From assembly GCF_032062105.1 (NCBI RefSeq), contig NW_026935730.1, forward strand, positions 1-64,000: 64,000 bases of DNA. The letters run 5' to 3'. The translations under genes were made by a program, and so were the position numbers. The stretch is from Saccostrea cucullata (taxonomy: Eukaryota). Shown here in pieces: positions 6,602-63,382 of this stretch (positions are counted from its first letter, which is position 1; every line of letters starts with the position of its first letter). The notes under the pieces are model-generated. The model ran no database searches and was not told the DNA's origin. It was given only the letters and a program-made list of their open reading frames with translations.

Positions 6602-6897
6602 TTAACCAAGATTAATGTACTCTGTTCTAGATTTGACATCAGTTTTTGTTATTTCCATATAGTGAGAAACATCGATTCCTGTATTATTACTGGGCATTGG
6701 GTCGTGAATATGAGCATACTCGGATTTGTCTTCTTTTCTGGCCACAGTACTTTCGTAGCCTGGATCTGAATTCCTGGAATAAGACGGTCGGCATTTTGTT
6801 CTCAGGAAACAGAGAAAGGGTGCTATAACCAACAAGATTATGACCATAGATAGTAATGAGACTGCCAGAAGGAATATGCTGTTCGTAATGGTTGTTT
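6602..6897 (-). CDS. Receptor gene 1 exon 10: TM helix and cytoplasmic tail
   Basis: IFLLAVSLLSMVIILLVIAPFLCFL followed by RTK and a tail with YEST, SEYAHI, SHYMEI and TEYINL, then TAA. A minus-strand AATAAA lies at 6432-6437. Confidence 0.88.
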
Positions 6898-9800
6898 CTG
6901 TACAAAAGGGAGAAAAAAGATTTTTAATTCATAGATGGAACTTTTACTATGTTAGTGGAATCACTGTTCTAAAAGGCATGGAACAGGCATGCGGGCATTT
7001 CTGTGCCTGTAAAAAATATCATTAAATGGTTAAAGTTACTCTATGAATTTCGTTTTGTCCCTAGAAGGAGACCATTCTTTGTAAATCAGATATATTGTAC
7101 GTTTAGGGAAAAGTATGACAACAAAGAAATTTTCATATTTAGAAAATTATTTGAATTTGAGATAAACACTTGACGTTAACCTATTTATCCTTTAATTTTT
7201 TGTTATACCTGTGGAAATTCCAGTCTGACAAAACTCTCCAGATCTGCCTTCATTACATCTAATACAATGTCCCGTCTCTGGGTTACATATATTATCTCTG
7301 CAGTCGTTGCTACAAGACTGATTACAGATAACTCCATAGAACGTCGAGGCACATACTGTAGTTAAACGATTAAATATAATGACCTTTGGTTAATTAGCAA
7401 GATAAAATTTGTAAAATGAAAAGAGGGATCAGACAAGGCTGTTCAATATCAGCAATTCTTTATATTTTAGGTTGTGGAAATTTTGTCTATAAAGATTAAA
7501 GAAAACAAGAATATACGAGGGCCGTTCAAAAATTACGCGGACTTGTTGCATAGTAAAAATATTTGACGACAAAAACAAATAAAAAGTTACACATGTTGTT
7601 GACATATGTTTACTTATATGACTTGCAAAATTTCATTTCAAAATATTGCCAATTCCCATCAGTAGTGGGTTCTGAATTAACATATATCCTGGAGTCACGG
7701 CGCAGTGCGGGCGTAATATCTGCGACGTCATTAACGTCATAAAAATGTGCGCTCACATCTTTTCAAAGTACTCCCCCTTGTGTTTGATACAAAGTTTGTG
7801 TCGCCTTATCCACTAATCGTATGCATTTTTGTACCATTTCCTGTCCAAGTTAGCTACTATAGATCTAGTCGCATATTTCAGTTCGTCAATATTTTCAAAC
7901 TTCCTGCCGCGAAGCTTTGATTTTACAGTAGGGAAGACTTTAAAGTCCATTGGGGCCAAATCAGGACTGTAAGGAGCATGTTCCACTCTTTCAAGACCAA
8001 GAAGATCAAGTTCTAGAATTGTTGATTCAGCTCGATGTGCAGGTGCATTATCTTGATGCAAGATCATATCTGCCAAGTTTTTGACTGGCCGTTTTTTCCG
8101 TACGGCTTGAAGGAGATCTCGTCTAATAACCTGTAAAATTAAATATCAGATTCATTATGGGTTTATTTGAGCTTTACCACGATATCCAAAACGTGATAAT
8201 AATATTAAAAATAAATAAATTTAATAATATGCTAAATGAGTAAAAAATTTCCGTGATTAAAAAATAATTATTGTTATTTAAAATGCACCTATTTACATGT
8301 AGCTCATTTTTAAATCTTATGTATCTTTAGCGTAAATTATTCTACTCGTCTTTAAAACTGACCTTCGAATAATAATCTGCGTTGACAGTTTGGTGGGCTG
8401 GGACAACGTGGATCAGTAACATGCCTTTAATGTCCATAAAGAAAATAAACATGTTTTTCCTAGACGATTGGCGGACTTTCGCTTTTTGTGGGGGAGGAGA
8501 AGATTTTCTTTTCCAAGCAGATGATTGCTGTTTTGTCTCAGGGTCAAAATAAAAAAGCCATGTTTCATCGGTTGTGATAATCCTGTTTAGAAAAGAGTCT
8601 CCTTCACTTGAGTGTCGTCTAAGGAAATTCCTGGACAATCGAACACGCTTGGCTTTATCATTTTCGGACAATAATCTAGGAATCCACCTTGCCGAAACCC
8701 TGCTCATGTTCAAATGATCAGTTAAAATTGTATGTACAGTTCCAGTACTAATCCCAACAAGTGATGATATTTCTTGAACTGTGTGACGTCGGTCATTTTC
8801 AATCACATTCTTAACACTTAATATCAGGTTTTCGTCTATGATCATCTTCCGTCCCCGTCCTGGATCGTCTTCCACTGAAGTCCTACCATCTGAAAATCTT
8901 TTGTGCCATTTGAAGACAAGTGTTCAGCATACTGCTGGTTTAATGTCCGCTTGATCTAGCATCTTTTTTGTCTCTGTTGGAGTCTTCCCGAGCGCCACAC
9001 AAAATTTTATGAAAGTCCGATGCGCCGTGACGTCACTTGACGCCATTGTTGCAGCTGTTTTTGGACCGAAGACTTCAGAGAAAAACTTCAATATTTCTAT
9101 TAATTTTCCAAATATTACGTCAAAAATTTAAACAAGTCATGACGTAACAATGAAAAGATACTGCAGAACAAATTTATGATTTTTCCCGCGAATTATCGGA
9201 AATAAATGAGTAAAAAAATTGATTCTGAAATTTGTTTTTTCTACGTTTTCACCTTGCTCCGTACATCAATTTTTGCAATATTATAACATGAATATTTTCG
9301 GAAAAAATTATAATTAATAACAAATAATGCCATAAATTATTTAAATACATTAAGGAATATATTATTGTAAAATTTTATTTATATCTGACGTCTGTAAAAT
9401 AAGATATTACCCGAGTCCGCGTAATTTTTGAACGGCCCTCGTAGAAGGCTTTCAACATGCTGATGACATGACAGTGGCATAAAAAAATATTGAATCTCTG
9501 AATCAAGCTTTGGTTACTATAAACAATTTTTGTCTTCATGCAGGTTCTAAAGTAAAACTGAATGTATTCTTCTTGGTCCTTTGAAAAAATCTCTTTAGAG
9601 AAATAGGGAGCATTACGGTTACAAATGAGGCAGTAAAGTGTCTAGGCATTTATATAGGTCATGATAAACTACAATGTTATAATAAAAATTGGATGAAAGT
9701 CTATCATGAAATAGAGGCTCTATTCGAATCATGAAAAGAAGAAAACTGACATTATTTGGGAAATGTACTGTAATAAACTCTTTAGCGCTTTCAAAACTAA

Positions 9801-12800
9801 TTTATCTAGCAAATATGTTAGAAACACCCAATGAAAATTATATTAAAAATATTAATAAACTAATATTCAATTTTATATGGAATAAAACAGATCTTATCAA
9901 AAGAAACACAATGATTGGTCATATTAAGGACGGTGGGTTAGGGATAATTGATAATGAGTCTAAGTTTAGAGCGATTAAAGCCTCATCTGTATGTAGATTG
10001 AGAAAAACAGATCACTGCATTAATAGCTACATAAATAGTTATTGTATTCTAATAAATATTAATATCGACTATGTGATTAACACCACGGAAAATAAAATAG
10101 AAAAATTCGAAATGATACGAAAGATGCCTCTATTTTATAAACAAGTATTTACATGTTTCAATGCATGCAAACAATTGCACGATAACCTCAGTGTTGAACT
10201 CTTTCTTAAACAACCGATATGGTCAAATTTAAGATACTCATATGAAGGAAAAACAATCTACTTTAAAAATTGGCTCAAAAGCAATATATTGTTTGTTTAA
10301 GATCTATTTTCCGAGAATGGTCTAAAATCATCCGATGAAATGGCAGGGATTTTGATAAATAAGAGTAATTGGTTATGTGAATATAAATTCATACACTCGA
10401 TCTTTAAAAAGTATGAAAAAGATATGATTTCTCTCTGTATAAACATCTTAAGGTGTCATTAAATACTTTATGTTTTAATAAATATACAACAAAATTCTTT
10501 TATAATGAATTTTTAAAAAGCAAATTTCAAACTCCGCTTGTGCAAACAAAGTATTCTTAAGAATTTAATATACCTAAGAGAGACTAGGAAAAAATCTACA
10601 TAAACAAAATAGAGTTATCAAAAGATAAACAAGTTGCGGAATTCAACTATAAGCTATTAAATAATATTCTGTCTAGCAATTATTTTGCAACTAAGATAAA
10701 TAAAAAGTATAATTACTCATGTAAAATATGTGTCGAAGATGTAGAACATTCAAAGCATCTAATTTTTGATTGTGCTAATGTGCGAGAAATCTGGGCTATA
10801 GTTAGCAATTTCTTAGGCTTTGATGTAAAATGGAAACATATAATTTTTGGTTTTTACATTGATAGAAATGAAACCACTGTCATGTATAATTTACTGTTAT
10901 CATTTGTAGCTTTTAAGATATACAAATATAAAATGTATTGTCGATTAGAAAATATTGATGAAACACATATAGGAATATATTATTTTATTTAAAATCTTGT
11001 ATTTTGAATTATTTTGAAATATTACATATTATGGGAGATACAAAATACTCTTTATTTTTTAAAAATCTATTGAAAAAAAGTAATTGTTTAAATGTCTTTG
11101 AGGGGGACCAGACCCTCAGGACGAACGCAAGAAAGGGGGGGGGGGGTAAAATAACAGACTCTGAGATGGTGAAAAGCTTACCTCCCTTCTAGATGTTATA
11201 ATTAAAACTGTTACAGAAATATGTTGCAAACTGGTATAATATTGTAAAATACCACTACATTCTTTTAACTATACAGACCTCTATTTTTTTTCCTTAAAAT
11301 ATTTTCTCTAGAGTTTTGTTTCCCTAGCAACATAAAGGTATAATTTTCTATCTTTTTAAGTATTTTGTTAATATACAACTTGATTGTTACACCTTTCAAG
11401 TATATAATTTTTGCTATCCAGTCTAGGGAGCCCCTGGCATCCTTGGTGAGGGTTATTATAAGGGGACATATGCGGATGTCTTTGCTCCAAAATTATATTG
11501 TTATCATGTTTTCATTGAATAAAATATTTTTAAAAAATCTTCATTAAAAAAAATAGCAAGGGTGCTCAGGGTTACCCATAAAAGAATATTAACTCTCTTT
11601 ATATACAGATCTAAGTTTTAAACATGTGGATTATATCTACTCACGTTTCCGACACCTGGATCCAATCCAGCCATCCCTACACCCTCCATCACATGACCCA
11701 TTCACGTGATCACACGACATGGGATCCAAACAATGTGGACTACAGTGATCCTTACACATCAGTCCGAAATGTCCAGGATCACATTCTAGAAAATATAAAT
11801 TTATTGCTTCTCTTTAATAAAGTAAGCGCCAATAAGAATATGAGAAATATAGGAAATAAGAATATAAGAAATTAAGCGTCATTTGAATAACTAGCATTTA
11901 AATTACGGAATTATGTAACAGTTACTTGATCCGAAGAGTCGTATTGACTCGGTTTGTGTACGAAGTGACTGGACACCGTATCACGTCGAGTTGACTGATG
12001 CAGATCTTTAAAAAAGTGTGCATGTCAAAAAGATGTGATACCGCACTTCAGATAAAGTTACGGGTACGACCCCCTTCCCTAAACTATAGCTTGCTTTATA
12101 TGAAAAGATATTTCATAAAGATACTTCTTCGGTTCTGGTGCAAAATAGTTCAGCAATATCCAACATAATAAAAAATAAATGCACTTGTACAGAAAAAGAC
12201 ATATACAGTTTTTTTTATCTTACTTTAACTTCGAAAAAATATTGTATTTAGTATATATAAGATATGAATAAAAATTAGATAACCTTGATCACATTTATCT
12301 CCTCTCCATCCAGGAGAACACTCTCCAGGACATGATCCATTCACGTGGTTACACGGAGTATTATTGATGCATGGCCCACAATGCAAAGAACAACCTTGAC
12401 CATATTTACCAGCTGGGCATTCTAAATTATATATAATACGGAAGTTAGTACATTGAGTTATTTTTTCCCAATTTCCTAGTTTATTCAAGGGGGAAGAAAT
12501 TGATTTTATTTGAAGAAGCTAAAATCACAGTGCTAGCCAGGAAGACGCATTTGCATGGGGATTTTTTTTTAGGGGGGGGGGGGGTGTTCCTAAAAAAAAT
12601 TAAGTTCCGAAAATTAGCATTTATTTAGGTGCGATAAATATACGCGATTTTCGCAGCCTTCTTTAAATGTATTTAATTTTATGCTTTCTGAGTCGAGAAA
12701 ATTAATCTTTGCAAATTGATTTCAAACTCTTCGTATTTTATCTTACTTTATTTAGAAATTACCACATGTTATAACATCGAAACACACTGAATGAAGTTTT

Positions 12801-15800: not shown

Positions 15801-18800
15801 TATATTATGTCACCATTAAGTAAACCCTGGATTTTAAGAATGCAGCAGTAATTTTCAAGCTAAGGAAAATATTCCGTTTAATGTTGAAATGCATTTCTCA
15901 GTGAAAAACTACTTTGTAAGCCTCTCATAGCACGTGAAAGACGTCATTTTTATCGACAAGTTCGATGCGATTAGTGATTTTTTATAAACTGCTATGTGGG
16001 ATTTAACAAGCAACTGTTTTTAATGTATTGATTAGTTTTAATGGTGTTTATTATACTAATATAGTATTAAGTTTCAAATTGTTTCATGTCTTGATATTAC
16101 GAGGCATAGCTTTTTCTGTGATGTCATAATAAACAATTCCCGTATAAATTAGGCCACGTCCCTTTGTTCTAGTCTTAACTATTCTGCGCTTTTATTTTTG
16201 CAGTTTTCAGAAGTGATAAAAAAATCATGATAGTTTTGAATTTAAAGTTTAAACAATTTAAATGAATTGTCTGTTCTTATCCAAATCCAAAATGTGATAA
16301 AAATAATGTTACATCAGAATCCTGTATCAGGAATATATAGTACCCTGATAAAGAAGAAAACAAGCCTAGGAGTAGGATAATGAAATTGAATGAAGATTAT
16401 ATCCTAGCAATATGGTTCTACCTAGTGTAGCTTACTACATATATACCTGTTTCACAATACTGTCCAGAGTATCCATCGTTACACTCAAAACATTCTCCTA
16501 TCTGAGAGTGACATGTGTTATTCAAACAATTCTGAGGACACTTTGACGTGCAGTTTCCTCCGTAAAATCCCAAGTCACATCCTGCAATTCACAACAAAAG
16601 AACTACTTTTACTGATCTTCTATTGCGAGATAAAACTGATTAAAAAAGCATTATGTGAAGTCGATACCTGTATGCAAGTCATGAATGAATTTATATGTAT
16701 GTTATAAGCCATGGTACAGTAGTAAATAACTTACTGAGGATGCCAACGTTTCAAATAAACAAGAAGGTTTATAAATACCAAAAAATTGCAAGAAACATTC
16801 AAATCACTAAATTATTTCTAATTTTTCTGTACTTTACATTTGCTACCGATCATGACTTTTTAAAACTAAAGAAAAGTGTGTTTTTATTCCGTACACTTGC
16901 AAAATTTAACTAACGATTTTGCATTAAATAGAACGCTTTGAGTTTTAACAAGCATTTAAAATCGTGAAAAATATGCCATTGCCTTTTTCGTAGTTTTGAG
17001 TTTCTGAAAAAAAGAAATTATTTAAAAAAAAATCATTTTCTTTTCTTATTTAACAATTTGTTGAGGAAGCTGGTTGGGCCTGGGGCACAATAAAGCCCAG
17101 TAAAACGAAAATACAAGAAAAAAATAAAAAAAATATCTAATGGAGAATATTTAAAACGCAGATAGTACCATGGCGTTTATGAATCAATCCAAGAGAAGAG
17201 AACAGTTACCTTTTACTTCGATTTCACATATATTTATATACGAAAAGTCGGATACATTAGGAAATGATGTTGTATTTTTTGCATTGTACACAGTAACGTA
17301 GCGACCGTAAGTGACACAGTCTACCGTGACGTTATTATGAGGTATTTGTTGTATATCATGTTGATAACAGAGAGTTCCTGATCTCCAGTCTTCTGTATCA
17401 GATACATACACAGAAAATCCAGACAAGGTGTTCCCTTCTGGAGAGAAATCATACAAAAGATGAATCATTATACCTTATGATGATTTGTCTAAAGAATAGT
17501 TATAGCCCAGCCACATATTTATATGATAAGATTAAAAATATCAATTCACATATTTTTGCAGAGATATTTTATTTTGAATACCATATATTAGTACCTTTGA
17601 TTGAGCAACATTTTAACATCTACTCCATTATTCCTTACTTTGACATTTAACAGCCACAGCTGATCCTGATGGACAGCCATATGATCCTTTTATACATCTA
17701 TTTATGTTAACTTCATTGCCTGCACAGTTCAATTTATTTTCATAAAATGGAGCCGATGAGGAATCAATAGATTTGGAATGAAGGGGACTGTCTCTAAAAA
17801 AAATAAAGAATTTATGTTTCATAAAATGTTTTATATACAAGCTTGTTTACATTGTTATTGACATAGTTAGATAAAAACTGCAGTTATTATTAATATGTTG
17901 CATGAAGAACCCTAAGGCAGGATCTATTGATCTGGATCGAATTTTTAACTATATAAATTGGCGGAAACATGAGGTTGTGGTCAATTTAAAATGAAGAATT
18001 AATCCATTTATACTAACATATATCTATATCAAATGAGTATGTATCTATATATACATTTGTATATAAAAATATACCGAACCATTGAAATTTCCCTGTCTTA
18101 CCAGTTAAGGCGTGTTATTAGATTTGAACAGTTTGATTTATTGTACATTCGACTTTTCGAGAATTCGGCTTTGCGGTAATTTCATCTTATCAACAAAGGA
18201 CGGGAAATTTCCCACCCTTTATTGCGATTTGTGCAATAATTGGATAAATTTCATAGAATACCCGGGCAACATGCATTTTGAGGGCATATTTCTCTTGTAG
18301 ATTCACACAGAATGTCTTCAATTTACCCCAATTAATCACCTGTGCCAGTCAAATGTAAACGCGATTCATCAACTCTGATTCAGAGGGGTAGGGGAAAGGG
18401 GCGTTTCACATTCAAGTTTTCGCTATTGTTAGAATATGTACATAATGGACAAGTGAAAGGAAAAGGGATATGTCCAACATTATAACAGCACACTCAGGCT
18501 TCAAAAAACAATCCCTTTACTGAAATAAACAACAACGCCAAAAATCTACATGCCATGTGAATAGAATGTAAAAAATAAATATCACACTTTACCCACCATG
18601 TCAGCTTAAGTATGCAATGACTTTTAAACAGTTTGATATTTTATGGGCAGACTTATCCTAGTCACGTAATAAACTTCTGAATGATCAGTGTCACCAGTCC
18701 ACCTATGCTAAGCATCCAATAATGATTACTTGATTGATTTATTGATAGAATATTCTTAACGTCCCTCTTAAGAAATTTTCACTCATATGGAAACGCCACC

Positions 18801-21800
18801 ACTTGCCGGTAGAGAGCTGTAAATTTGTTCCTTAATCGGCAGTCAGGGCCATTGAGGAGGGAGAGGTCATTTTTGTGTCAGCACCTACTGCAACACGGAA
18901 CCTCGGTTTATACGGTCTCATTCAAAGGACCGGTCTCCACGTCCACAATGGGATTTACAACCGCGACATAAGGATTGAGACCCTACTTTGCGACTCTTGA
19001 GCAGACGCTCTAACCACTGCGCCAGGCTGGCAACTAATTACTTTGACAACCAATAACCTGAATTGTTAAATTTGTCTAGTGCATGCCTTAAAAGCATATA
19101 TTACTCGACATTAACACAAATATGGTACTTTATTCACCTTCTAATCTGGTGAAACAATTCCTCATTGTATATATGCATTTAATTGCTATATTTTTTTTTA
19201 CGTTTGGACTAATCACTTAACCTCTGTCAAAGTTTTGCTGCTACAAAAGCAGGTAAGAATGGTTCATTCGAAAATGTCATCCAATAACTTGGTCATTTGA
19301 ACTCAAATGCAAGCAGACGTTGAATTAAAATTAATGTTTTTAAGTTCTAAATTCCAAACTTGGTCATAAGAATTCCAAAGTTAGATGTTTCCTCTTATTC
19401 ACGTACTGCCACCGAGTATCAAAAAAAAGAGAGGTTAGTAGATAACTGTTTTAGGAAGAAAGATTACAGAATGGTTTTTAGGTCAGCTTATGGCTGCTCA
19501 AAAAAGGTGTACACTTTTTGTAGCATCAGCTCAATATGGAACAGAAGAAATTTCAACTGTTAAGAGGTCATCATATAGTTGCTTATAAAACAGTTATTAA
19601 GTGAGTGATCTTGGCAAGGTTTTGCTTTGAAATGTGCAAGCTTGTTCATGAGATCAGTATATGACTGCTAATGTCTATTCACGTCATGAGCTTCATACAT
19701 TTTACACTTCAATTTGCTTGTGTAAGCAGTTTGTGAGCTTATATACATGAGATAAGAATCTTATATACATGAGATAAGAATTTTTCTGCTCAGAAAAACT
19801 GTACAGTAGTCAAAATCTAAGCAGATGTTTGTTTTTGAATTAGTGTATGAGGTCAGCATAAACATGTAGCTGCTCAAAAACTGCATGGCAGTTGGAGCTT
19901 ATCATACCTTTGTTCTTACATTTTATAAAAACTGTATTGTATAAATGAGCTTACCATAGTAGGATTTGTTGTTAAATATTGTTTTACGAGGTCAGCATAT
20001 GGGGGTTTTTATATTATCTTTATTTATCTTAAAGGGTTAGCAACTGCTCCTCGTCAATATTGTTACTTAGCCAGATAACTCTTTTATATGATATTTTAAT
20101 TTGTTGATGTTTGTTACAAAGGTTTGACCATATACTTTATATACATAATTTGACAAGATAGATGCTTAAAGCAATAACATAAAATTAATATGAATACCGG
20201 TATAATACTACATATGTACCTACATCAACACGAGTCATTAAGTCTGTCCGCACAGTGTTATTCAATGAATTGTCTATTTTTGGGCTGACTGAATGCGTCT
20301 CGGTAGCTTCTTTGTTTACACCACCTTCATGTCAGACTTACATTGTAATTATTAAGTAACAGTACATGTAACTGGGATAAGTCGCAGTATTATAGTTTTG
20401 TTAAAATGGTTCCTATATAAAGTTTAGAAGGTAAAATAAATATCTTTTATAGTCTGAAAATTTCCACGCATAGCAATGTTATGCGCCGGGTATAGTTTTT
20501 GCTAATCACCCCTCGGAAAATTTAAATGCAAATTTTGCCACCGATTTTTATTTCCAAGGATAAATCTATAGACTGATGATGTCATAATGACTTCAGCTGC
20601 ATTGTGCCGTCATTAGGATTTCAGATTATTCTTGCAGTATTATCTTACTCCAAAAAAAATTCAATCCTCAGAAATAATACTATACATCAGTGTAATAAAA
20701 CACTTATCCACTGTTTGAGAGTGGGAAGCTCTTTCATCAAACCCTTGACAGGGACTATTCCCCTTGGCAAGCCCTTTGGGAATAGTTCCCTGTCGCGGGT
20801 TTGATAAAAAAGCTATCCCACTCAAAACCAGTGGATAAGTGTATAATATATCATATCAAAGTTGAAACTATTCATCAATTTTCCTTATCCCAGCTATAAT
20901 TTACATGAGTGTACGTAATTGTGTATTTTATGTCTTTTGTCATTTATCTGGTCATGACATGTTCACCCAACTCAATTTCTTCTGTTTCCTTTAGTGGTTC
21001 AAACAAAAAGGACAAGCTGTGGAAAGGCGTTTAATATTATGAGATTTATTGTTCTTTAATAAAAAAAAACTGGATGAAAAAATATTTTTATCTTATAAAA
21101 AAAAATGCCTAGGGAAAAAGAAGAATGAGAAATATATAACGTGCTCAAAATAGAAACAAAAATCTGAATTAAAGTATTTCAAATATTAATACACATTGTT
21201 TGATTTAATTACTTACCTTCGAGCCTAATGCAAGGATTAAAGATTTGTTTTTCAAATTAAAAGAAATATTCTATATTTGAAAAATACACATGTTAAAAAA
21301 ACACTTGTTAGGAATTCTCAAGTTGTTGTTGTACTCGAAGTTAACACTTTCGTAATTTGTACATCACTTGATAATTAAATAATACGTGTTTATTTAAATT
21401 TTTTTCTTTCAAATTTATAGATTATTTCTTTTAACTATTTATTTATCAATACAACCCCTATACCCATTTTAATTCTACAACTCATTTTTTAATTTTTTTG
21501 CATTTGATCTCTTTCTAAAATAATATCAATATAAACCCTAATGATTTTCAATCTGTTAGGTACGTAAGATTCTGTTATTTCTATTTTTTTTTTGTATGGA
21601 ATAACATTATATTCGACCATGTTGATATAATCTGCTCTTTAAAAATACTATGAACAGGAGTTGTATTTTCAGAGTATCTTTTTCATAAAGATTTCATATA
21701 GATACATGTATTTGAATACGCTTTAAGATGTTTGAAAAGAAATGAATTTTTGAATTAACATAAACTACTAGAATAAAAACAAAAATCAAAAATCCCTTTT

Positions 21801-23309
21801 ATAGCTTGCAATTATTATGATCAGGATAATCAATTCTATCAAACGTCGTCATATGTCATAAAAAATAATCAAATGTATACTCACGGTAAAAAACCCCAAG
21901 CCAGACAAACGACCTGGGCATCTTTTGCATCAAAGCTATCCAAACAAATTCTTCTTAGTGAATTGGCAGCAAAGACTGGTCCGTCTCCATTTGTATCAGC
22001 ATAGATACCAGAATCAGATGTTCTTAATGAGGATGCATCAAGACCAACTGAAAATTAAATAGGTATGTTTAGATCTTTGAATGTTATAGAATTAATTTTT
22101 TTAGAGGATTTTTAAAAAAAAAAAAATAGAATAATAATACACATCATTTATTTATATATCTGCCCTAGCAATATCATGAAACATTTCATGCCAAACAAAT
22201 ACCTAAATCTTTTACATTTCTTTTCGTTTTTTTATGACACAGTGACATTTATGCTAAGTTTGTCCACTAACAAAAACTAAATATTTCCATTTCTATTTGT
22301 TTTCTTTGTGATAAATGTAACTCTTTCAAAGTAAGTGGAGTTGCTTCTTTGTTAAAATTCTCCCCGAATGTTAATCAGGCAAATCGATACTCCAGGAACT
22401 TAAGAGGCCTCATACACATGTAAATCTCGTGCGCGTTTGTCTTTGTGTCTGACGCTAGGGAGGCAAGATATGCGTGCAAATTTCGTGCGGCTGCCTCTGT
22501 GTTTGACATGGGAGTAACAAAATCTATTAGTCGACGTTTTTGAAATCTTAATCTACAATTTTATTTCACAATGAAATGGAAATATAACGAATCAAGTAAG
22601 TAAAGTAAAGTTAGTAAAGTATGCCAGGGACACGACAGCAGGAAACGTAGTATAAATTATGCATAATGGGCTTCCCTTGCTTCCAATTATCGTCGATGTC
22701 CTGGCATACTAAATAAATATTCATAAAACATTGACCAATTTATTTTGTTTGACAAATGAAATAAGAGTAAAGTAACGTAAATCTAAATGCTTACAGCCCC
22801 CGTGTAAGATTGAGATCGATGCTATATTTTTATTCTCCCCGAGATCCACTGTTAACCACGCCTCTTTCTGACCGGAAGCTGTCAGTGCACATTCCAGTAG
22901 GTATGTACTCTTGTCTCCGTCCACGGCTTTACTTGGTGAAAAGTATCCGTAATTGTATCTACTACTGACCTTCACAGGTTTCCTACTGGCAAGATTTTCT
23001 AGAAGTAATTGTATATTTAATTTATTCTACTCTTTTTTTCATCTTTATTGACATGCTTCAAAACACAACCTTTATGGTATCTGATTCCTGATATTCTTAA
23101 AATAAGTTGATTGTTTGCACTTTTATACATGATTTTTTGTTCTGTTTATTTCCTGACTTTTAAAAATAAATCTTAAATATTGAATTGTAAAGCTTTTAAT
23201 GTTTTCGTACGACTTAAACATGTAACAAATATTAAAACCTACCATATTGTTGAGAATTGATAAGGAACTGGCTGAAAATAAGTAGAAAATTGATGACACC
23301 GAGGTCCAT
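6602..23309 (-). CDS. Type-I membrane receptor, 557 aa: SP / F-type-lectin-like domain with inserted SRCR / 4x EGF (MEGF10/CED-1/SREC-like) / TM / Tyr-motif tail
   Basis: Hand-spliced complement(join(23243-23309,22795-22998,21885-22047,17639-17793,17210-17437,16447-16581,12284-12421,11645-11785,7209-7355,6602-6897)). All introns are GT-AG, with phases 1,1,2,1,1,1,1,1,1. Total 1674 nt, open from ATG to TAA. Confidence 0.88.
7209..7355 (-). CDS. Receptor gene 1 exon 9: EGF-like repeat
   Basis: CASTFYGVICNQSCSNDCRDNICNPETGHCIRCNEGRSGEFCQTGIST; 147 nt, phase 1-1. Confidence 0.88.
7516..9441 (-). mobile_element. Full-length mariner (DD34D) DNA transposon
   Basis: Perfect 28-bp TIRs CGAGGGCCGTTCAAAAATTACGCGGACT; TA TSD at 7514-7515 and 9442-9443. 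Confidence 0.95.
7753..9046 (-). pseudogene. Mariner transposase (~353 aa), one intron, two premature stops
   Basis: Exons 9046-8363 and 8130-7753. Motifs WIPRLL, TTDETW, HQDNAPAH and YSPDLAPMDF (34 residues between the last two catalytic D). TGA at 8924-8926 and TAG at 7813-7815. Confidence 0.92.
11645..11785 (-). CDS. Receptor gene 1 exon 8: EGF-like repeat
   Basis: CDPGHFGLMCKDHCSPHCLDPMSCDHVNGSCDGGCRDGWIGSRCRK; 141 nt, phase 1-1. Confidence 0.9.
11946..11977. mobile_element. Solo terminus of the MITE family at 53447-54463
   Basis: GACTCGGTTTGTGTACGAAGTGACTGGACACC is the exact reverse complement of the 53447 left end. Confidence 0.75.
12284..12421 (-). CDS. Receptor gene 1 exon 7: EGF-like repeat
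   Basis: CPAGKYGQGCSLHCGPCINNTPCNHVNGSCPGECSPGWRGDKCDQ; 138 nt, phase 1-1. Confidence 0.9.
15366..15521. repeat. ~155-bp imperfect palindrome (hairpin MITE)
   Basis: TAAGGAATGAAGCTTATTTCAAC...GTTGAAATAAGCTTCATTCCTTA; the arms pair nearly to the centre. Confidence 0.8.
15698..16188. mobile_element. Diverged partial relative of the CGCAG-TIR element
   Basis: ACTTT..GAAAGTGCTGCTGCTTT.AATA.AATTC and the terminal CCCGTATAAATT.GGCC...TTAAC.ATTCTGCG resemble 50772 and 51450-51499. Confidence 0.55.
16447..16581 (-). CDS. Receptor gene 1 exon 6: EGF-like repeat
   Basis: CDLGFYGGNCTSKCPQNCLNNTCHSQIGECFECNDGYSGQYCET; 135 nt, phase 1-1. Not in the ORF track. Confidence 0.88.
17210..17437 (-). CDS. Receptor gene 1 exon 5: C-terminal half of F-type-lectin-like domain
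   Basis: LSGFSVYVS...LC...DC...GRYVTVYN...NICEIEVKG contains the GRYV and LCEVEV-type motifs. Confidence 0.9.
17639..17793 (-). CDS. Receptor gene 1 exon 4: SRCR C-terminal half
   Basis: PFYENKLNCAGNEVNINRC...GCPSGSAVAVKCQ matches SRCR C-x-G-x-E-x5-C...C...V-x-C. Phase 2 in, phase 1 out. Confidence 0.88.
18731..19031 (-). mobile_element. tRNA-derived SINE with V-domain-like core
   Basis: On the minus strand: A-box TGGCGCAGTGG, core GAATGAGACCGTATAAACCGAGGTTCCGTG, and tail GGGACGTTAAG...(CAAT)n. Shares core and tail with the 43424 SINE. Confidence 0.75.
20700..20842. repeat. ~143-bp imperfect palindrome (hairpin MITE)
   Basis: ACACTTATCCACTG...GACAGGGACTATTCCC / GGGAATAGTTCCCTGTC...CAGTGGATAAGTGT. 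Confidence 0.8.
21885..22047 (-). CDS. Receptor gene 1 exon 3: SRCR N-terminal half
   Basis: ...GDGPVF...RRICLDSFDAKDAQVVCLAWGF matches the SRCR pattern VC-x2-F/W-x3-DAxVVC-x2-LG. Boundaries TTTCAG| and |GTGAGT. Confidence 0.88.
22618..22710. repeat. Small inverted-repeat element
   Basis: AGTATGCCAGGGACACGAC ... GTCGATGTCCTGGCATACT. Confidence 0.65.
22795..22998 (-). CDS. Receptor gene 1 exon 2: N-terminal half of F-type-lectin-like domain
   Basis: ENLASRKPVKVSS...SKAVDGD...ECALT...AWLTVDLG...IASISILHGG. NLA, AVDG and W-x-VDLG are FTP-fold motifs. Confidence 0.9.
23243..23309 (-). CDS. Receptor gene 1 exon 1: signal peptide
   Basis: MDLGVINFLLIFSQFLINSQQY followed by a G|GTAGG donor. Phase 1 matches exon 2. 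Confidence 0.75.
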
Positions 23310-62775: not shown

Positions 62776-62938
62776 AGTAAAAATACCCAAACTAGGCAAA
62801 CAACCTGAGCATCCTTTACATCAAAGCTATCCACGCAAATCTTTCTTAATAGGTTAGCAACAAACACAGTCCCATCTCCATCGGAATCAGGAAAGAGACC
62901 AGAGTCAGATGTTCTTATTGAGGACGCATTGAGAGCAA
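62776..62938 (-). pseudogene. Gene 2 exon: SRCR N-half
   Basis: ALNASSIRTSDSGLFPDSDGDGTVFVANLLRKICVDSFDVKDAQVVCLVWVFL; homologous to 21885-22047 with the same length and phase. Confidence 0.88.
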
Positions 62939-63178
62939 CTGTAAATGACAAATGTATGCTAAAGTCTTTAAATATTATTTTCTGTGCACATAATTGCATA
63001 AACATTAGTTGTTTGGAATATAAATATACAAATCCAACTTAAGTTTATATACACATTGAATGATTCTTACATGTTAATAAACAATAAATGTTCATATAAC
63101 ATCCGCCTTGCTATAAATTGTGCTTGATCAATAAAATAAAGGTAATATACGGCATAGTTTACATATTAAAATGCTTAC

Positions 63179-63382
63179 TGCCCCCATGTAAGATTCATAT
63201 CGATGCTATATTTTTCTTCTTCCCGAGATCCACTGTTAACCACGCCTCCTTCTGACCGGAAGCTGTAAGTGTGCAGTCCAGTAGGTATGAACTCCTGTCT
63301 CCGTCAACGGCTTTACTTGGTGAAAAATATCCATCACTGTATTTAGTACTGACCGTAACATTTTTCCTACTGGCAAGATTTC
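63179..63382 (-). pseudogene. Gene 2 exon: F-type-lectin N-half with premature TGA
   Basis: NLASRKNVTVSTKYSDGYFSPSKAVDGDRSSYLLDCTLTASGQKEAWLTVDLGKKKNIASI*ILHGG; clearly homologous to 22795-22998. Confidence 0.9.

What the first reader, a model, noticed from the sequence alone, without database searches (positions are those of the whole stretch)
17210..22998. An SRCR domain is inserted inside an F-type-lectin fold, at the fucose-binding loop
Seen: exon 2 encodes the N-half of an FTP/fucolectin-like domain and exon 5 the C-half. Exons 3-4 between them encode a complete 6-Cys (group A-like, two-exon) SRCR domain bounded by phase-1 introns. Known: F-type lectins bind fucose through H-x26-R-x-D-x4-R, whose R-x-D...R loop follows the strand after VDLG. 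Here the His is absent (ECALT) and that loop is exactly where the SRCR is spliced in, while the structural AVDG and ICEIEV motifs remain. Inference: exon shuffling replaced a sugar-binding loop with a scavenger-receptor module, giving a nested rather than tandem domain architecture on a MEGF/CED-1-like stalk. This may be an undescribed class of bivalve pattern-recognition or engulfment receptor. The paralog at 62776-63382 has the same junction, so it predates the duplication.
Basis: partly seen in the sequence, partly recalled or inferred. Interest (0 to 1): 0.88.

Follow-up and report, generated by a model that had tools for sequence, protein, structure and literature searches.

The report
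SRCR domain nested inside oyster lectin fold
Oysters have a family of about twenty cell-surface receptor genes in which a scavenger-receptor (SRCR) domain sits inside the former sugar-binding loop of a fucose-lectin fold. It is a clean natural case of one extracellular domain inserted into another by exon shuffling, and I found it described in no paper.

Summary
On the minus strand, exons 22998-22795, 22047-21885, 17793-17639 and 17437-17210 have GT..AG borders and the stated phases. A public Saccostrea cucullata protein model (P0001) uses exactly these junctions. Contigs of one probable RNA run show all three junctions.

Exons 2 and 5 together fold as one F-type lectin domain (VIA Z 20.6 to bass FBP32, 19.4 to eel agglutinin). 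Exons 3-4 are a six-cysteine SRCR domain (Pfam 36.4 bits, cut-off 26.1). It lies in loop CDR4, between the equivalents of eel Arg79 and Arg86. The fucose triad His/Arg/Arg is Leu/Gly/Thr.

At least 19 further loci in this genome have the same exon order. Nested proteins also occur in Magallana gigas and Crassostrea angulata. Truncated models in C. virginica and Ostrea edulis point the same way.

An uninserted neighbour gene has a phase-1 intron at the same spot, so the SRCR exons entered an existing intron. All four exons are under purifying selection.

The gene encodes a 557-aa receptor with EGF repeats and an ITAM-like tail; a paralog carries a tyrosine phosphatase instead. The ligand and the function are untested.

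The scan noted this receptor family before on other DNA, by its tails, but not the nesting. I rate it a new variant of a known kind.

The parts
23244..23309 (-). Exon 1: start codon and signal-peptide-like leader
   Evidence: tblastn of P0001 residues 1-22, 100% identical
22795..22998 (-). Exon 2: N-terminal half of the F-type lectin fold (eel His52 position is Leu; ends ILHGG)
21885..22047 (-). Exon 3: N-terminal half of the SRCR insert (first two cysteines)
   Evidence: joint 22047/22795 in X1
17639..17793 (-). Exon 4: C-terminal half of the SRCR insert (four cysteines)
   Evidence: joint 17793/21885 in X1
17210..17437 (-). Exon 5: C-terminal half of the F-type lectin fold (starts GNTLSGF; eel Arg86 position is Thr)
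   Evidence: joint 17437/17639 in X1
16448..16588 (-). EGF-like exon 6 (borders approximate)
   Evidence: tblastn of P0001 residues 271-317
12285..12422 (-). EGF-like exon 7 (borders approximate)
   Evidence: tblastn of P0001 residues 318-363, 100%
11646..11786 (-). EGF-like exon 8 (borders approximate)
   Evidence: tblastn of P0001 residues 364-410, 100%
7209..7355 (-). EGF-like exon 9; the public model P0001 reads past its donor at 7208-7207 into the intron
6602..6897 (-). Last exon: transmembrane helix and a 57-aa tail with YAHI and YMEI-x10-YINL (ITAM-like), plus the stop codon
   Evidence: 36% match to the tail of the Ostrea edulis protein P0005
62781..63380 (-). Orphan exon 2'-exon 3' pair of a paralog with the same phase-1 junction; in-frame TGA at 63197-63195; no exon 4' or 5' in the window

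Best explanation
This is a real gene of the hooded oyster Saccostrea cucullata, probably expressed. It encodes a 557-aa type I membrane receptor with this order: signal peptide, F-type-lectin-fold domain with a group-A-like SRCR domain nested in its CDR4 loop, four MEGF-type EGF repeats, transmembrane helix, and a short tail with an ITAM-like motif (YMEI-x10-YINL).

Shown here:
- The architecture and the splicing.
- The single lectin fold made by the two halves.
- The position of the insert between the Arg79 and Arg86 equivalents of eel agglutinin.
- The loss of the His/Arg/Arg fucose triad and of the Cys-Cys pair.
- A single origin of the nested clade. Full nested models exist in Saccostrea, Magallana gigas and Crassostrea angulata; truncated models suggest the same in C. 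virginica and Ostrea edulis.
- Purifying selection on all four exons.

Inferred origin: a two-exon SRCR cassette with phase 1 at both ends landed in a pre-existing phase-1 intron that splits the lectin domain in this family. The gene then multiplied by tandem duplication.

Inferred mechanism:
- The lectin fold no longer binds fucose. It serves as a rigid pedestal.
- Its N and C termini leave from the bottom of the barrel towards the EGF stalk. CDR4 lies on the top face, so the SRCR is held out at the membrane-distal tip as the ligand-binding head.
- Ligand binding is then passed to a Syk-type kinase through the ITAM-like tail.
- Paralogs with the same head but a tyrosine-phosphatase tail (P0002) would act as counterparts.

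The confidence of 0.7 is for the whole statement. I put the shown parts (architecture, splicing, insert position, single origin) at about 0.9 and the pedestal-and-head mechanism at about 0.5.
For: - Junctions and phases.
- Public model with the same junctions.
- Spliced contigs with all three joints.
- One fold from the two halves: AF2 pLDDT 83.3, pTM 0.83; Foldseek top hits are F-type lectins; VIA gives 3cqo Z 20.6, rmsd 1.8, 139 aligned, and 1k12 Z 19.4, both over model range 1-256.
- Family profile against PDB sequences: 3cqo E 2.8e-23, 1k12 E 1.4e-10. The residue alignment places eel H52, R79 and R86 at Leu, Gly and Thr, with the insert in place of GDCCGE.
- CDR4 lies on the top face and the termini at the bottom of the barrel: PMC5712786.
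- SRCR identity: Pfam E 6.8e-9, 36.4 bits against a cut-off of 26.1; 12 of 13 family inserts match. The insert profile hits MARCO at 6.4e-9, SCARA5 at 2e-8 and CD163.
- 19 further loci keep the order exon 2-3-4-5.
- dN/dS is 0.21, 0.44, 0.48 and 0.19 for exons 2 to 5.
- The uninserted neighbour has a phase-1 intron at the same residue and is sister to a 100/99-supported nested clade.
- Relatives in Magallana gigas, C. angulata, C. virginica and Ostrea edulis.
- Tail and phosphatase paralog.
Against: - No ligand, tissue or binding data exist.
- Run X1 is only guessed to be RNA. Its contigs are 90-99% alike, so some may come from paralogs. The contig that bridges exons 2-3-4 is about 97% alike.
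- The SRCR folded alone gave a useless model (pLDDT 43). In the full model its second half has pLDDT of only 50-67.
- The lectin halves are more conserved (omega about 0.2) than a mere pedestal might need, so they may still contribute to binding.
- The C. virginica model (P0014) lacks the second SRCR exon and the Ostrea model (P0005) starts inside the SRCR. For those two species the nested form is shown only in part.
- The ITAM spacer of 10 residues is longer than the classical 6-8.
- I could not read the model coordinates, so the tip position of the SRCR rests on published lectin topology, not on a measurement.
Confidence: 0.7

Rival explanations
1. The lectin fold is still the main binding element, using its other loops (CDR1, 2, 3, 5) for a sugar other than fucose or for a non-sugar ligand. 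The SRCR would be an accessory, acting as a lid, a co-binding surface or an oligomerisation piece. The working site would be a composite of both domains.
For: The lectin halves are under strong constraint (omega 0.19-0.21). The calcium-site residues and both structural disulfides are kept. pTM 0.83 suggests a fixed contact between the two domains. Other proteins with this fold and no triad bind other ligands, for example factor V C2 with phospholipid (PMC5712786).
Against: His, both Arg residues and the Cys-Cys pair of the primary site are all replaced, invariantly across the nested clade. The SRCR occupies the rim of the former pocket. The SRCR evolves about twice as fast at replacement sites, as expected of the ligand-facing part.
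Confidence: 0.25
2. The family has a non-immune role, such as cell adhesion, gamete or larval recognition, or clearance of the animal's own debris, rather than pathogen recognition.
For: Oyster F-type lectins include sperm bindins (PMC12221842). MEGF10/Draper-type EGF stalks and ITAM tails serve engulfment of dying cells (my own knowledge). No expression data tie this gene to haemocytes.
Against: There is none directly. The large tandem expansion, the ITAM or phosphatase tail pairs and the SRCR head resemble immune receptor families (earlier scan notes).
Confidence: 0.2
3. Gene-model artefact: exons 3-4 belong to another transcript or are optional, and the real product is a plain lectin-EGF receptor.
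For: The public model is automatic. Run X1 is not certified as RNA. A non-canonical joint, 17732 to 22797, was also reported.
Against: Skipping exons 3-4 makes a TAA stop. One contig bridges exons 2, 3 and 4, and another bridges exons 4 and 5, at canonical sites. The same exon order is seen in 19 loci, and nested models exist in other oyster species. Exons 3-4 are under purifying selection. The joined protein folds coherently.
Confidence: 0.03

Closest known systems
F-type lectins (eel agglutinin AAA, PDB 1K12; striped bass FBP32, 3CQO; streptococcal fucose modules)
   Same: Same jellyroll fold (Z 19-21, rmsd 1.8-2.4 over about 138 residues). Significant profile match. The calcium-site Asp residues and the two structural disulfides are kept.
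   Different: The fucose triad His52/Arg79/Arg86 is Leu/Gly/Thr. The Cys82-Cys83 pair is gone. CDR4 carries a 107-residue SRCR domain. [quoted passage not shown]
Group A SRCR domains (MARCO, SCARA5, MSR1, Mac-2 binding protein)
   Same: Six cysteines, two coding exons, Pfam SRCR above its cut-off, and the best single-domain PDB matches are group A members.
   Different: It is not terminal or tandem but embedded in another domain. The first strand region is divergent (the Pfam match starts at profile position 13). The usual Asp-Asp pair after the first cysteine is x-Asp.
Uninserted oyster lectin-EGF receptors ('MEGF10/MEGF6-like', ITAM-tailed or phosphatase-tailed) noted earlier in this scan
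   Same: Same lectin-fold family, the same phase-1 intron in the domain, the same EGF stalk, and the same two kinds of tail.
   Different: They have a 10-18-residue loop where this clade has an SRCR. Some of them keep the His and both Arg residues.
Known nested extracellular domains (integrin alpha-I domain in the beta-propeller, integrin beta-I in the hybrid domain, laminin domain IV in an EGF-like module; my own knowledge)
   Same: A whole folded domain is inserted in a surface loop of a host domain, with the termini of the insert close together.
   Different: A different pair of folds. Here the insertion hits the host's former ligand pocket, and the exon-level route (a phase 1-1 cassette in a phase-1 intron, with an uninserted sister gene next door) is still visible.
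Draper / CED-1 / MEGF10 engulfment receptors
   Same: Atypical EGF repeats, a single transmembrane pass, and a tail with YxxI-x10-YxxL like the long-spacer ITAM of Draper (my own knowledge).
   Different: No EMI domain and no NPxY motif were seen. The EGF match to the PEAR1-like profile is below its cut-off.

Membership tests
F-type lectin domain (fold) | Beta-jellyroll superposable on AAA or FBP32 over the whole domain | tested here: met
   VIA gives 3cqo Z 20.6, rmsd 1.8, 139 aligned, and 1k12 Z 19.4, both over model range 1-256. Foldseek E is 7e-9 to 1e-8.
F-type lectin domain (fold) | Sequence-profile relationship to solved F-type lectins | tested here: met
   hmmsearch with the family alignment A1: 3cqo E 2.8e-23, 1k12 E 1.4e-10.
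F-type lectin (fucose-binding) | Basic triad His52, Arg79, Arg86 (motif H-x24-R-x-D-x4-R/K) | tested here: not met
   The aligned positions are Leu, Gly and Thr, invariant in the nested clade.
F-type lectin (fucose-binding) | Contiguous Cys82-Cys83 disulfide in CDR4 | tested here: not met
   The segment is replaced by the SRCR insert.
F-type lectin domain (fold) | Structural calcium-site residues and the Cys50-Cys146 and Cys108-Cys124 disulfides | tested here: met
   AVDGD, EC...ICE and LCY...DC are conserved in the alignment. The metal and the disulfide pairing themselves were not tested.
SRCR domain, group A | Match to the SRCR profile above the curated cut-off | tested here: met
   PF00530 E 6.8e-9, 36.4 bits against 26.1, profile positions 13-100. 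12 of 13 family inserts match.
SRCR domain, group A | Six cysteines and two coding exons (group B has eight and one) | tested here: met
   Six invariant cysteines. Exons 3 and 4 are split by a phase-2 intron. Disulfide pairing was not tested.
SRCR domain, group A | SRCR fold (sheet cradling one helix) | tested here: inconclusive
   In the full model the region has pLDDT 50-86 with one helix, and Foldseek hits CD5L 8r83_N at E 3.9e-5. The insert modelled alone failed (pLDDT 43).
MEGF10 / Draper / CED-1 receptors | N-terminal EMI domain | tested here: not met
   No EMI match in the Pfam scan of P0001. The N terminus is the lectin-SRCR unit.
MEGF10 / Draper / CED-1 receptors | Atypical EGF repeats, transmembrane pass, ITAM or NPxY tail | tested here: inconclusive
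   EGF_PEAR1L E 0.0016, below its cut-off. A transmembrane helix and YMEI-x10-YINL are present, but no NPxY.
ITAM-bearing immune receptors | YxxL/I-x6-8(12)-YxxL/I in a cytoplasmic tail that recruits a tandem-SH2 kinase | tested here: inconclusive
   The motif is present with a 10-residue spacer and is shared with the Ostrea protein P0005. Kinase binding cannot be tested with these tools.

The most novel reading that the evidence does not exclude
Oysters turned a dead fucose-lectin barrel into a framework that displays a fast-evolving SRCR head at its former binding loop. They expanded it into about twenty genes wired either to an ITAM-like tail or to a tyrosine phosphatase. That would be a lineage-specific set of paired activating and inhibitory innate receptors, with recognition resting on a nested two-domain head unlike any described receptor.
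Probability: 0.3. Interest if true: 0.75.

Novelty: new variant of a known kind. Interest (0 to 1): 0.6.

Why it matters
Mosaic extracellular proteins are nearly always beads on a string, and whole-domain insertions into another module are rare. Here the route is still legible:
- a host domain already split by a phase-1 intron;
- a two-exon SRCR cassette with phase 1 at both ends;
- an uninserted sister gene on the same contig;
- a clade of about twenty descendants shared by several oyster genera.

This gives a textbook-grade case of exon shuffling creating a nested fold.

It also shows that a lectin jellyroll tolerates a 107-residue domain in CDR4, which is useful for protein engineering.

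Finally, it points to a testable receptor family in oysters, with an SRCR head and ITAM-like or phosphatase tails, for invertebrate immunity or engulfment.

Domain-based censuses that count 'lectin' and 'SRCR' separately, or that miss the split lectin half, will misclassify these genes. Public names range from 'sushi, nidogen and EGF-like' to 'eyes shut homolog'.

Tried and rejected
- **SRCR insert folded alone** (alignment A2). The model had pLDDT 43 and pTM 0.34 and was unusable, so I ran no fold search on it.
- **Word-based search with the SRCR part of P0001.** It found only four close Saccostrea proteins and says nothing about the donor of the SRCR.
- **Profile search with the nested region** (A3). 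It found only oyster proteins plus one fish SRCR protein. The length window and word index limit this search, so absence elsewhere is not shown.
- **Ten longer proteins from the exon 5 search.** They turned out to be tandem lectin-domain proteins without SRCR.
- **Atlas feature search.** It pointed to two echinoderm clusters that carry both SRCR and F5/8-type-C. I could not fetch their sequences, so nested versus tandem is unresolved. The Atlas shape search found no cluster matching both domains at once; TM by query was at most 0.56, covering the lectin part only.
- **Further uninserted loci from the genome.** The same-position intron is therefore shown at the DNA level for one uninserted gene only. 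It is also suggested by the more than 100 exon-5-like matches that all start at query residues 1-5.
- **Only one sequencing run was offered,** and it is not certified as RNA.
- **Papers.** Two F-type lectin reviews contain no mention of SRCR or scavenger receptor, and the 2025 one none of inserts. Four keyword searches gave nothing on this architecture.
- **Joined model.** The joined 557-aa model was not sent to any search or fold tool. I used the public protein P0001 for exons 1-9 and read the last exon by reference. The only joining was inside a script: the two exon translations of the neighbour gene L050 were merged into one row of the tree alignment.
Full report
**Observation.**
I read the minus strand of 17100-23100.
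- exon 2, 22998-22795
- exon 3, 22047-21885
- exon 4, 17793-17639
- exon 5, 17437-17210

Each has an AG acceptor and a GT donor. Exon 2 is entered and left in phase 1. The intron inside the SRCR is phase 2. Exons 4 and 5 are both left in phase 1, so exons 3-4 form a symmetric 1-1 cassette. Joining exon 2 directly to exon 5 would give T+AA, a stop codon, so the cassette cannot simply be skipped in this gene.

Pfam places exon 2 on positions 2-54 of F5_F8_type_C (E 2.5e-8). It places exons 3 and 4 on positions 13-40 and 57-100 of SRCR. Exon 5 alone gives no match.

**Is it spliced that way?**
A search of 1.84 billion representative proteins with exon 5 returned P0001. It is 464 aa, 100% identical, and has exon 5 at residues 198-272. 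It maps back to the window exon by exon. A source names it as a Saccostrea cucullata protein, 'sushi, nidogen and EGF-like domain-containing protein 1'.

Only one sequencing run was offered, and its kind is a guess. Its contigs cover the exons, while the introns are empty apart from repeats. They carry joints at 22047/22795, 17793/21885 and 17437/17639, each with CT..AC ends on the plus strand. One 277-base contig spans the end of exon 2, all of exon 3 and 25 bases of exon 4, with 7 differences over the 252 bases listed (about 97% alike). A non-canonical joint, 17732 to 22797, is also listed. I take it for a mis-laid paralog contig, but I cannot show that.

**One fold from two halves.**
I aligned the head of P0001 with ten nested relatives and twelve relatives without an insert (A1). 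The uninserted proteins have a loop of 10-18 residues where the nested ones have about 105 residues.

AlphaFold2 on this alignment gave mean pLDDT 83.3 and pTM 0.83. Foldseek against the PDB ranks F-type lectins first: 3cqo, 1k12, lectinolysin and the pneumococcal fucose module. The alignments span the whole model. VIA-align gives:
- 3cqo: Z 20.6, rmsd 1.8, 139 residues
- 1k12: Z 19.4, rmsd 2.2, 138 residues

Both cover model range 1-256. Exons 2 and 5 therefore build a single jellyroll of about 150 residues, with the middle 107 residues looping out.

**Where exactly is the insert?**
A profile of A1 hits the sequences of 3cqo (E 2.8e-23) and 1k12 (E 1.4e-10). The printed alignment lets the eel residues be counted. 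His52 lies in CTHS, Arg79 in NRGD and Arg86 in ERIS. In P0001 these positions are Leu (ECALT), Gly (ILHGG) and Thr (GNTLSGF). The insert takes the place of eel residues 81-85, which include the Cys82-Cys83 pair.

The 2017 review states four relevant things (PMC5712786):
- His52, Arg79 and Arg86 hold the fucose.
- Cys82-Cys83 touches the sugar.
- Arg79 and Asp81 belong to CDR4.
- The five CDR loops crown the top of the barrel, while the N and C termini leave from the bottom.

Leu, Gly and Thr are invariant in the ten nested proteins of alignment A3. The calcium-site Asp residues and the cysteines of both structural disulfides are kept.

**Is the insert an SRCR?**
P0001:91-197 scores 36.4 bits on Pfam SRCR (E 6.8e-9, cut-off 26.1, profile positions 13-100). 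Twelve of thirteen family inserts match. A profile of the inserts hits MARCO (6.4e-9), SCARA5 (2e-8), neurotrypsin, Mac-2 binding protein and MSR1. These group A members rank ahead of single group B domains.

Six cysteines are invariant, and the domain has two exons. Both are marks of group A (my own knowledge of the SRCR classification). Modelled alone, the insert failed (pLDDT 43). The fold is therefore supported by sequence and by a Foldseek hit of the full model to CD5L, not by a good model of its own.

**Family and age.**
Exon 5 finds more than 150 exon-like matches in this 1.17-Gb genome. Nearly all start at query residues 1-5, which points to a conserved exon border. About 26 of them are close.

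For 19 non-redundant close loci I fetched up to 10 kb. Wherever the fetched stretch or the contig reaches far enough, the order is exon 2, 3, 4, 5.

| Exon | Protein identity to this gene |
|---|---|
| 2 | 70-90% |
| 5 | 53-87% |
| 3 | 38-79% |
| 4 | 43-81% |

Pairwise Nei-Gojobori estimates give dN/dS of 0.21 (exon 2), 0.44 (exon 3), 0.48 (exon 4) and 0.19 (exon 5). The insert is therefore constrained, but it changes about twice as fast as its host.

Full nested models exist in Magallana gigas and Crassostrea angulata. A C. virginica model lacks the second SRCR exon. An Ostrea edulis model begins inside the SRCR and runs straight into the lectin C-half. No hit came from another bivalve family, but those searches are limited by length window and word index.

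**Origin.**
On contig C3484, next to four nested paralogs, lies a gene with exon-2-like and exon-5-like exons about 1.75 kb apart and no SRCR exons (L050). Its first exon ends CAC AAG A|GT. Its second begins AG|TT GGG. This gives ...INYHK-I-GSTMAGF..., a phase-1 intron at exactly the residue where the nested genes have ...ILHGG-F-[SRCR]-K-GNTLSGF....

In a maximum-likelihood tree of the lectin columns, the nine nested proteins form one clade (100/99). L050 is their sister (92/88). The next group out still has the His and both Arg residues. I left out P0154 and P0158 as partial. A few loop columns are poorly aligned.

L050 itself has Leu at the His position. The triad was therefore probably lost before the SRCR cassette entered the intron.

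**Rest of the protein.**
Four EGF-type exons follow. P0001 then reads past the donor at 7208-7207. Splicing to 6897 instead gives a transmembrane helix and a 57-residue tail with YAHI and YMEI-x10-YINL. The Ostrea protein ends YMDI-x10-YINL. Paralog P0002 has the same head and stalk but a receptor tyrosine phosphatase domain (Pfam E 3.8e-82). Earlier notes of this scan describe such pairs of ITAM-tailed and phosphatase-tailed genes in this genome on other contigs. They do not mention the nested SRCR.

**How it most likely works.**
The sugar pocket is dismantled, and the SRCR sits on the top face, opposite the stalk. It is the faster-evolving part. My best reading is therefore that the barrel is a pedestal and the SRCR is the ligand-binding head of a signalling receptor. 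The conserved acidic residues of the SRCR core (x-D after the first cysteine, and the invariant N-E of GNE) leave room for the cation-dependent binding known from other SRCR domains (my own knowledge). This part is inference. A composite site made of both domains is a live alternative, given the tight constraint on the barrel.

**Novelty.**
The proteins are in public databases under assorted automatic names, and precomputed Pfam lists show both families. Two reviews of F-type lectins list partner domains: C-type lectin, pentraxin, CCP, FA58C and transmembrane. Neither mentions SRCR or scavenger receptor, and the 2025 review mentions no insert. Keyword searches found no paper on the architecture.

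The Atlas shape search found no large cluster matching both domains at once. The Atlas feature search flagged two echinoderm clusters with both Pfam families, but their domain order is unknown.

Whole-domain insertions are known in other receptors, so I rate this a new variant of a known kind.

**Procedural note.**
The joined 557-aa model was not sent to any search or fold tool. The public protein P0001 stood in for exons 1-9, and the last exon was read by reference.

Noticed in passing
window 62781-63380 (-): Orphan exon 2'-exon 3' pair of a paralog with the same junction. It has an in-frame TGA at 63197-63195 and no exon 4' or 5' in the window. The same kind of orphan pair lies upstream of a full copy in L036 (2673-3318). 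One is also read into the 3' end of public model P0151. Partial duplications of the first half of the head therefore recur.
   Followed up: partly
window 6602-7355 (-): Public model P0001 reads through the donor at 7208-7207 and ends after five intron-encoded residues. It therefore lacks the transmembrane and tail exon (6897-6602), which carries the ITAM-like YMEI-x10-YINL.
   Followed up: yes
window 44647-44994 (-): An isolated EGF-like exon, possibly with membrane-proximal sequence, matches P0002, P0005 and P0014 at 34-62%. It may be a remnant of the same broken upstream paralog.
   Followed up: no
window about 18790-19030 (intron 3): tRNA-like SINE sequence with contig depth above 1000 in run X1. 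Many loose ends there show that it is a highly repeated, probably transcribed element.
   Followed up: no
window about 20700-20830 (intron 3): Long, nearly perfect palindrome that looks like a MITE.
   Followed up: no
window 9731-10300 (+): A 189-aa ORF, which by eye looks like the C-terminal part of a LINE reverse transcriptase, lies inside an intron between the EGF exons.
   Followed up: no
window 17732 / 22797: A non-canonical joint (TT..AG, skips 5064 bases, 30 bases on the short side) appears in one X1 contig. It is unexplained and is probably a paralog contig laid on two exons.
   Followed up: no
Atlas clusters (no locus): Two echinoderm protein clusters of about 400 aa carry both SRCR and F5/8-type-C Pfam families. 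Whether the domains are tandem or nested could not be checked.
   Followed up: partly
L045 (G000:C15363:1458-5623): The exon-3-like match of this paralog contains a stop codon, so at least one of the close copies is probably a pseudogene.
   Followed up: no
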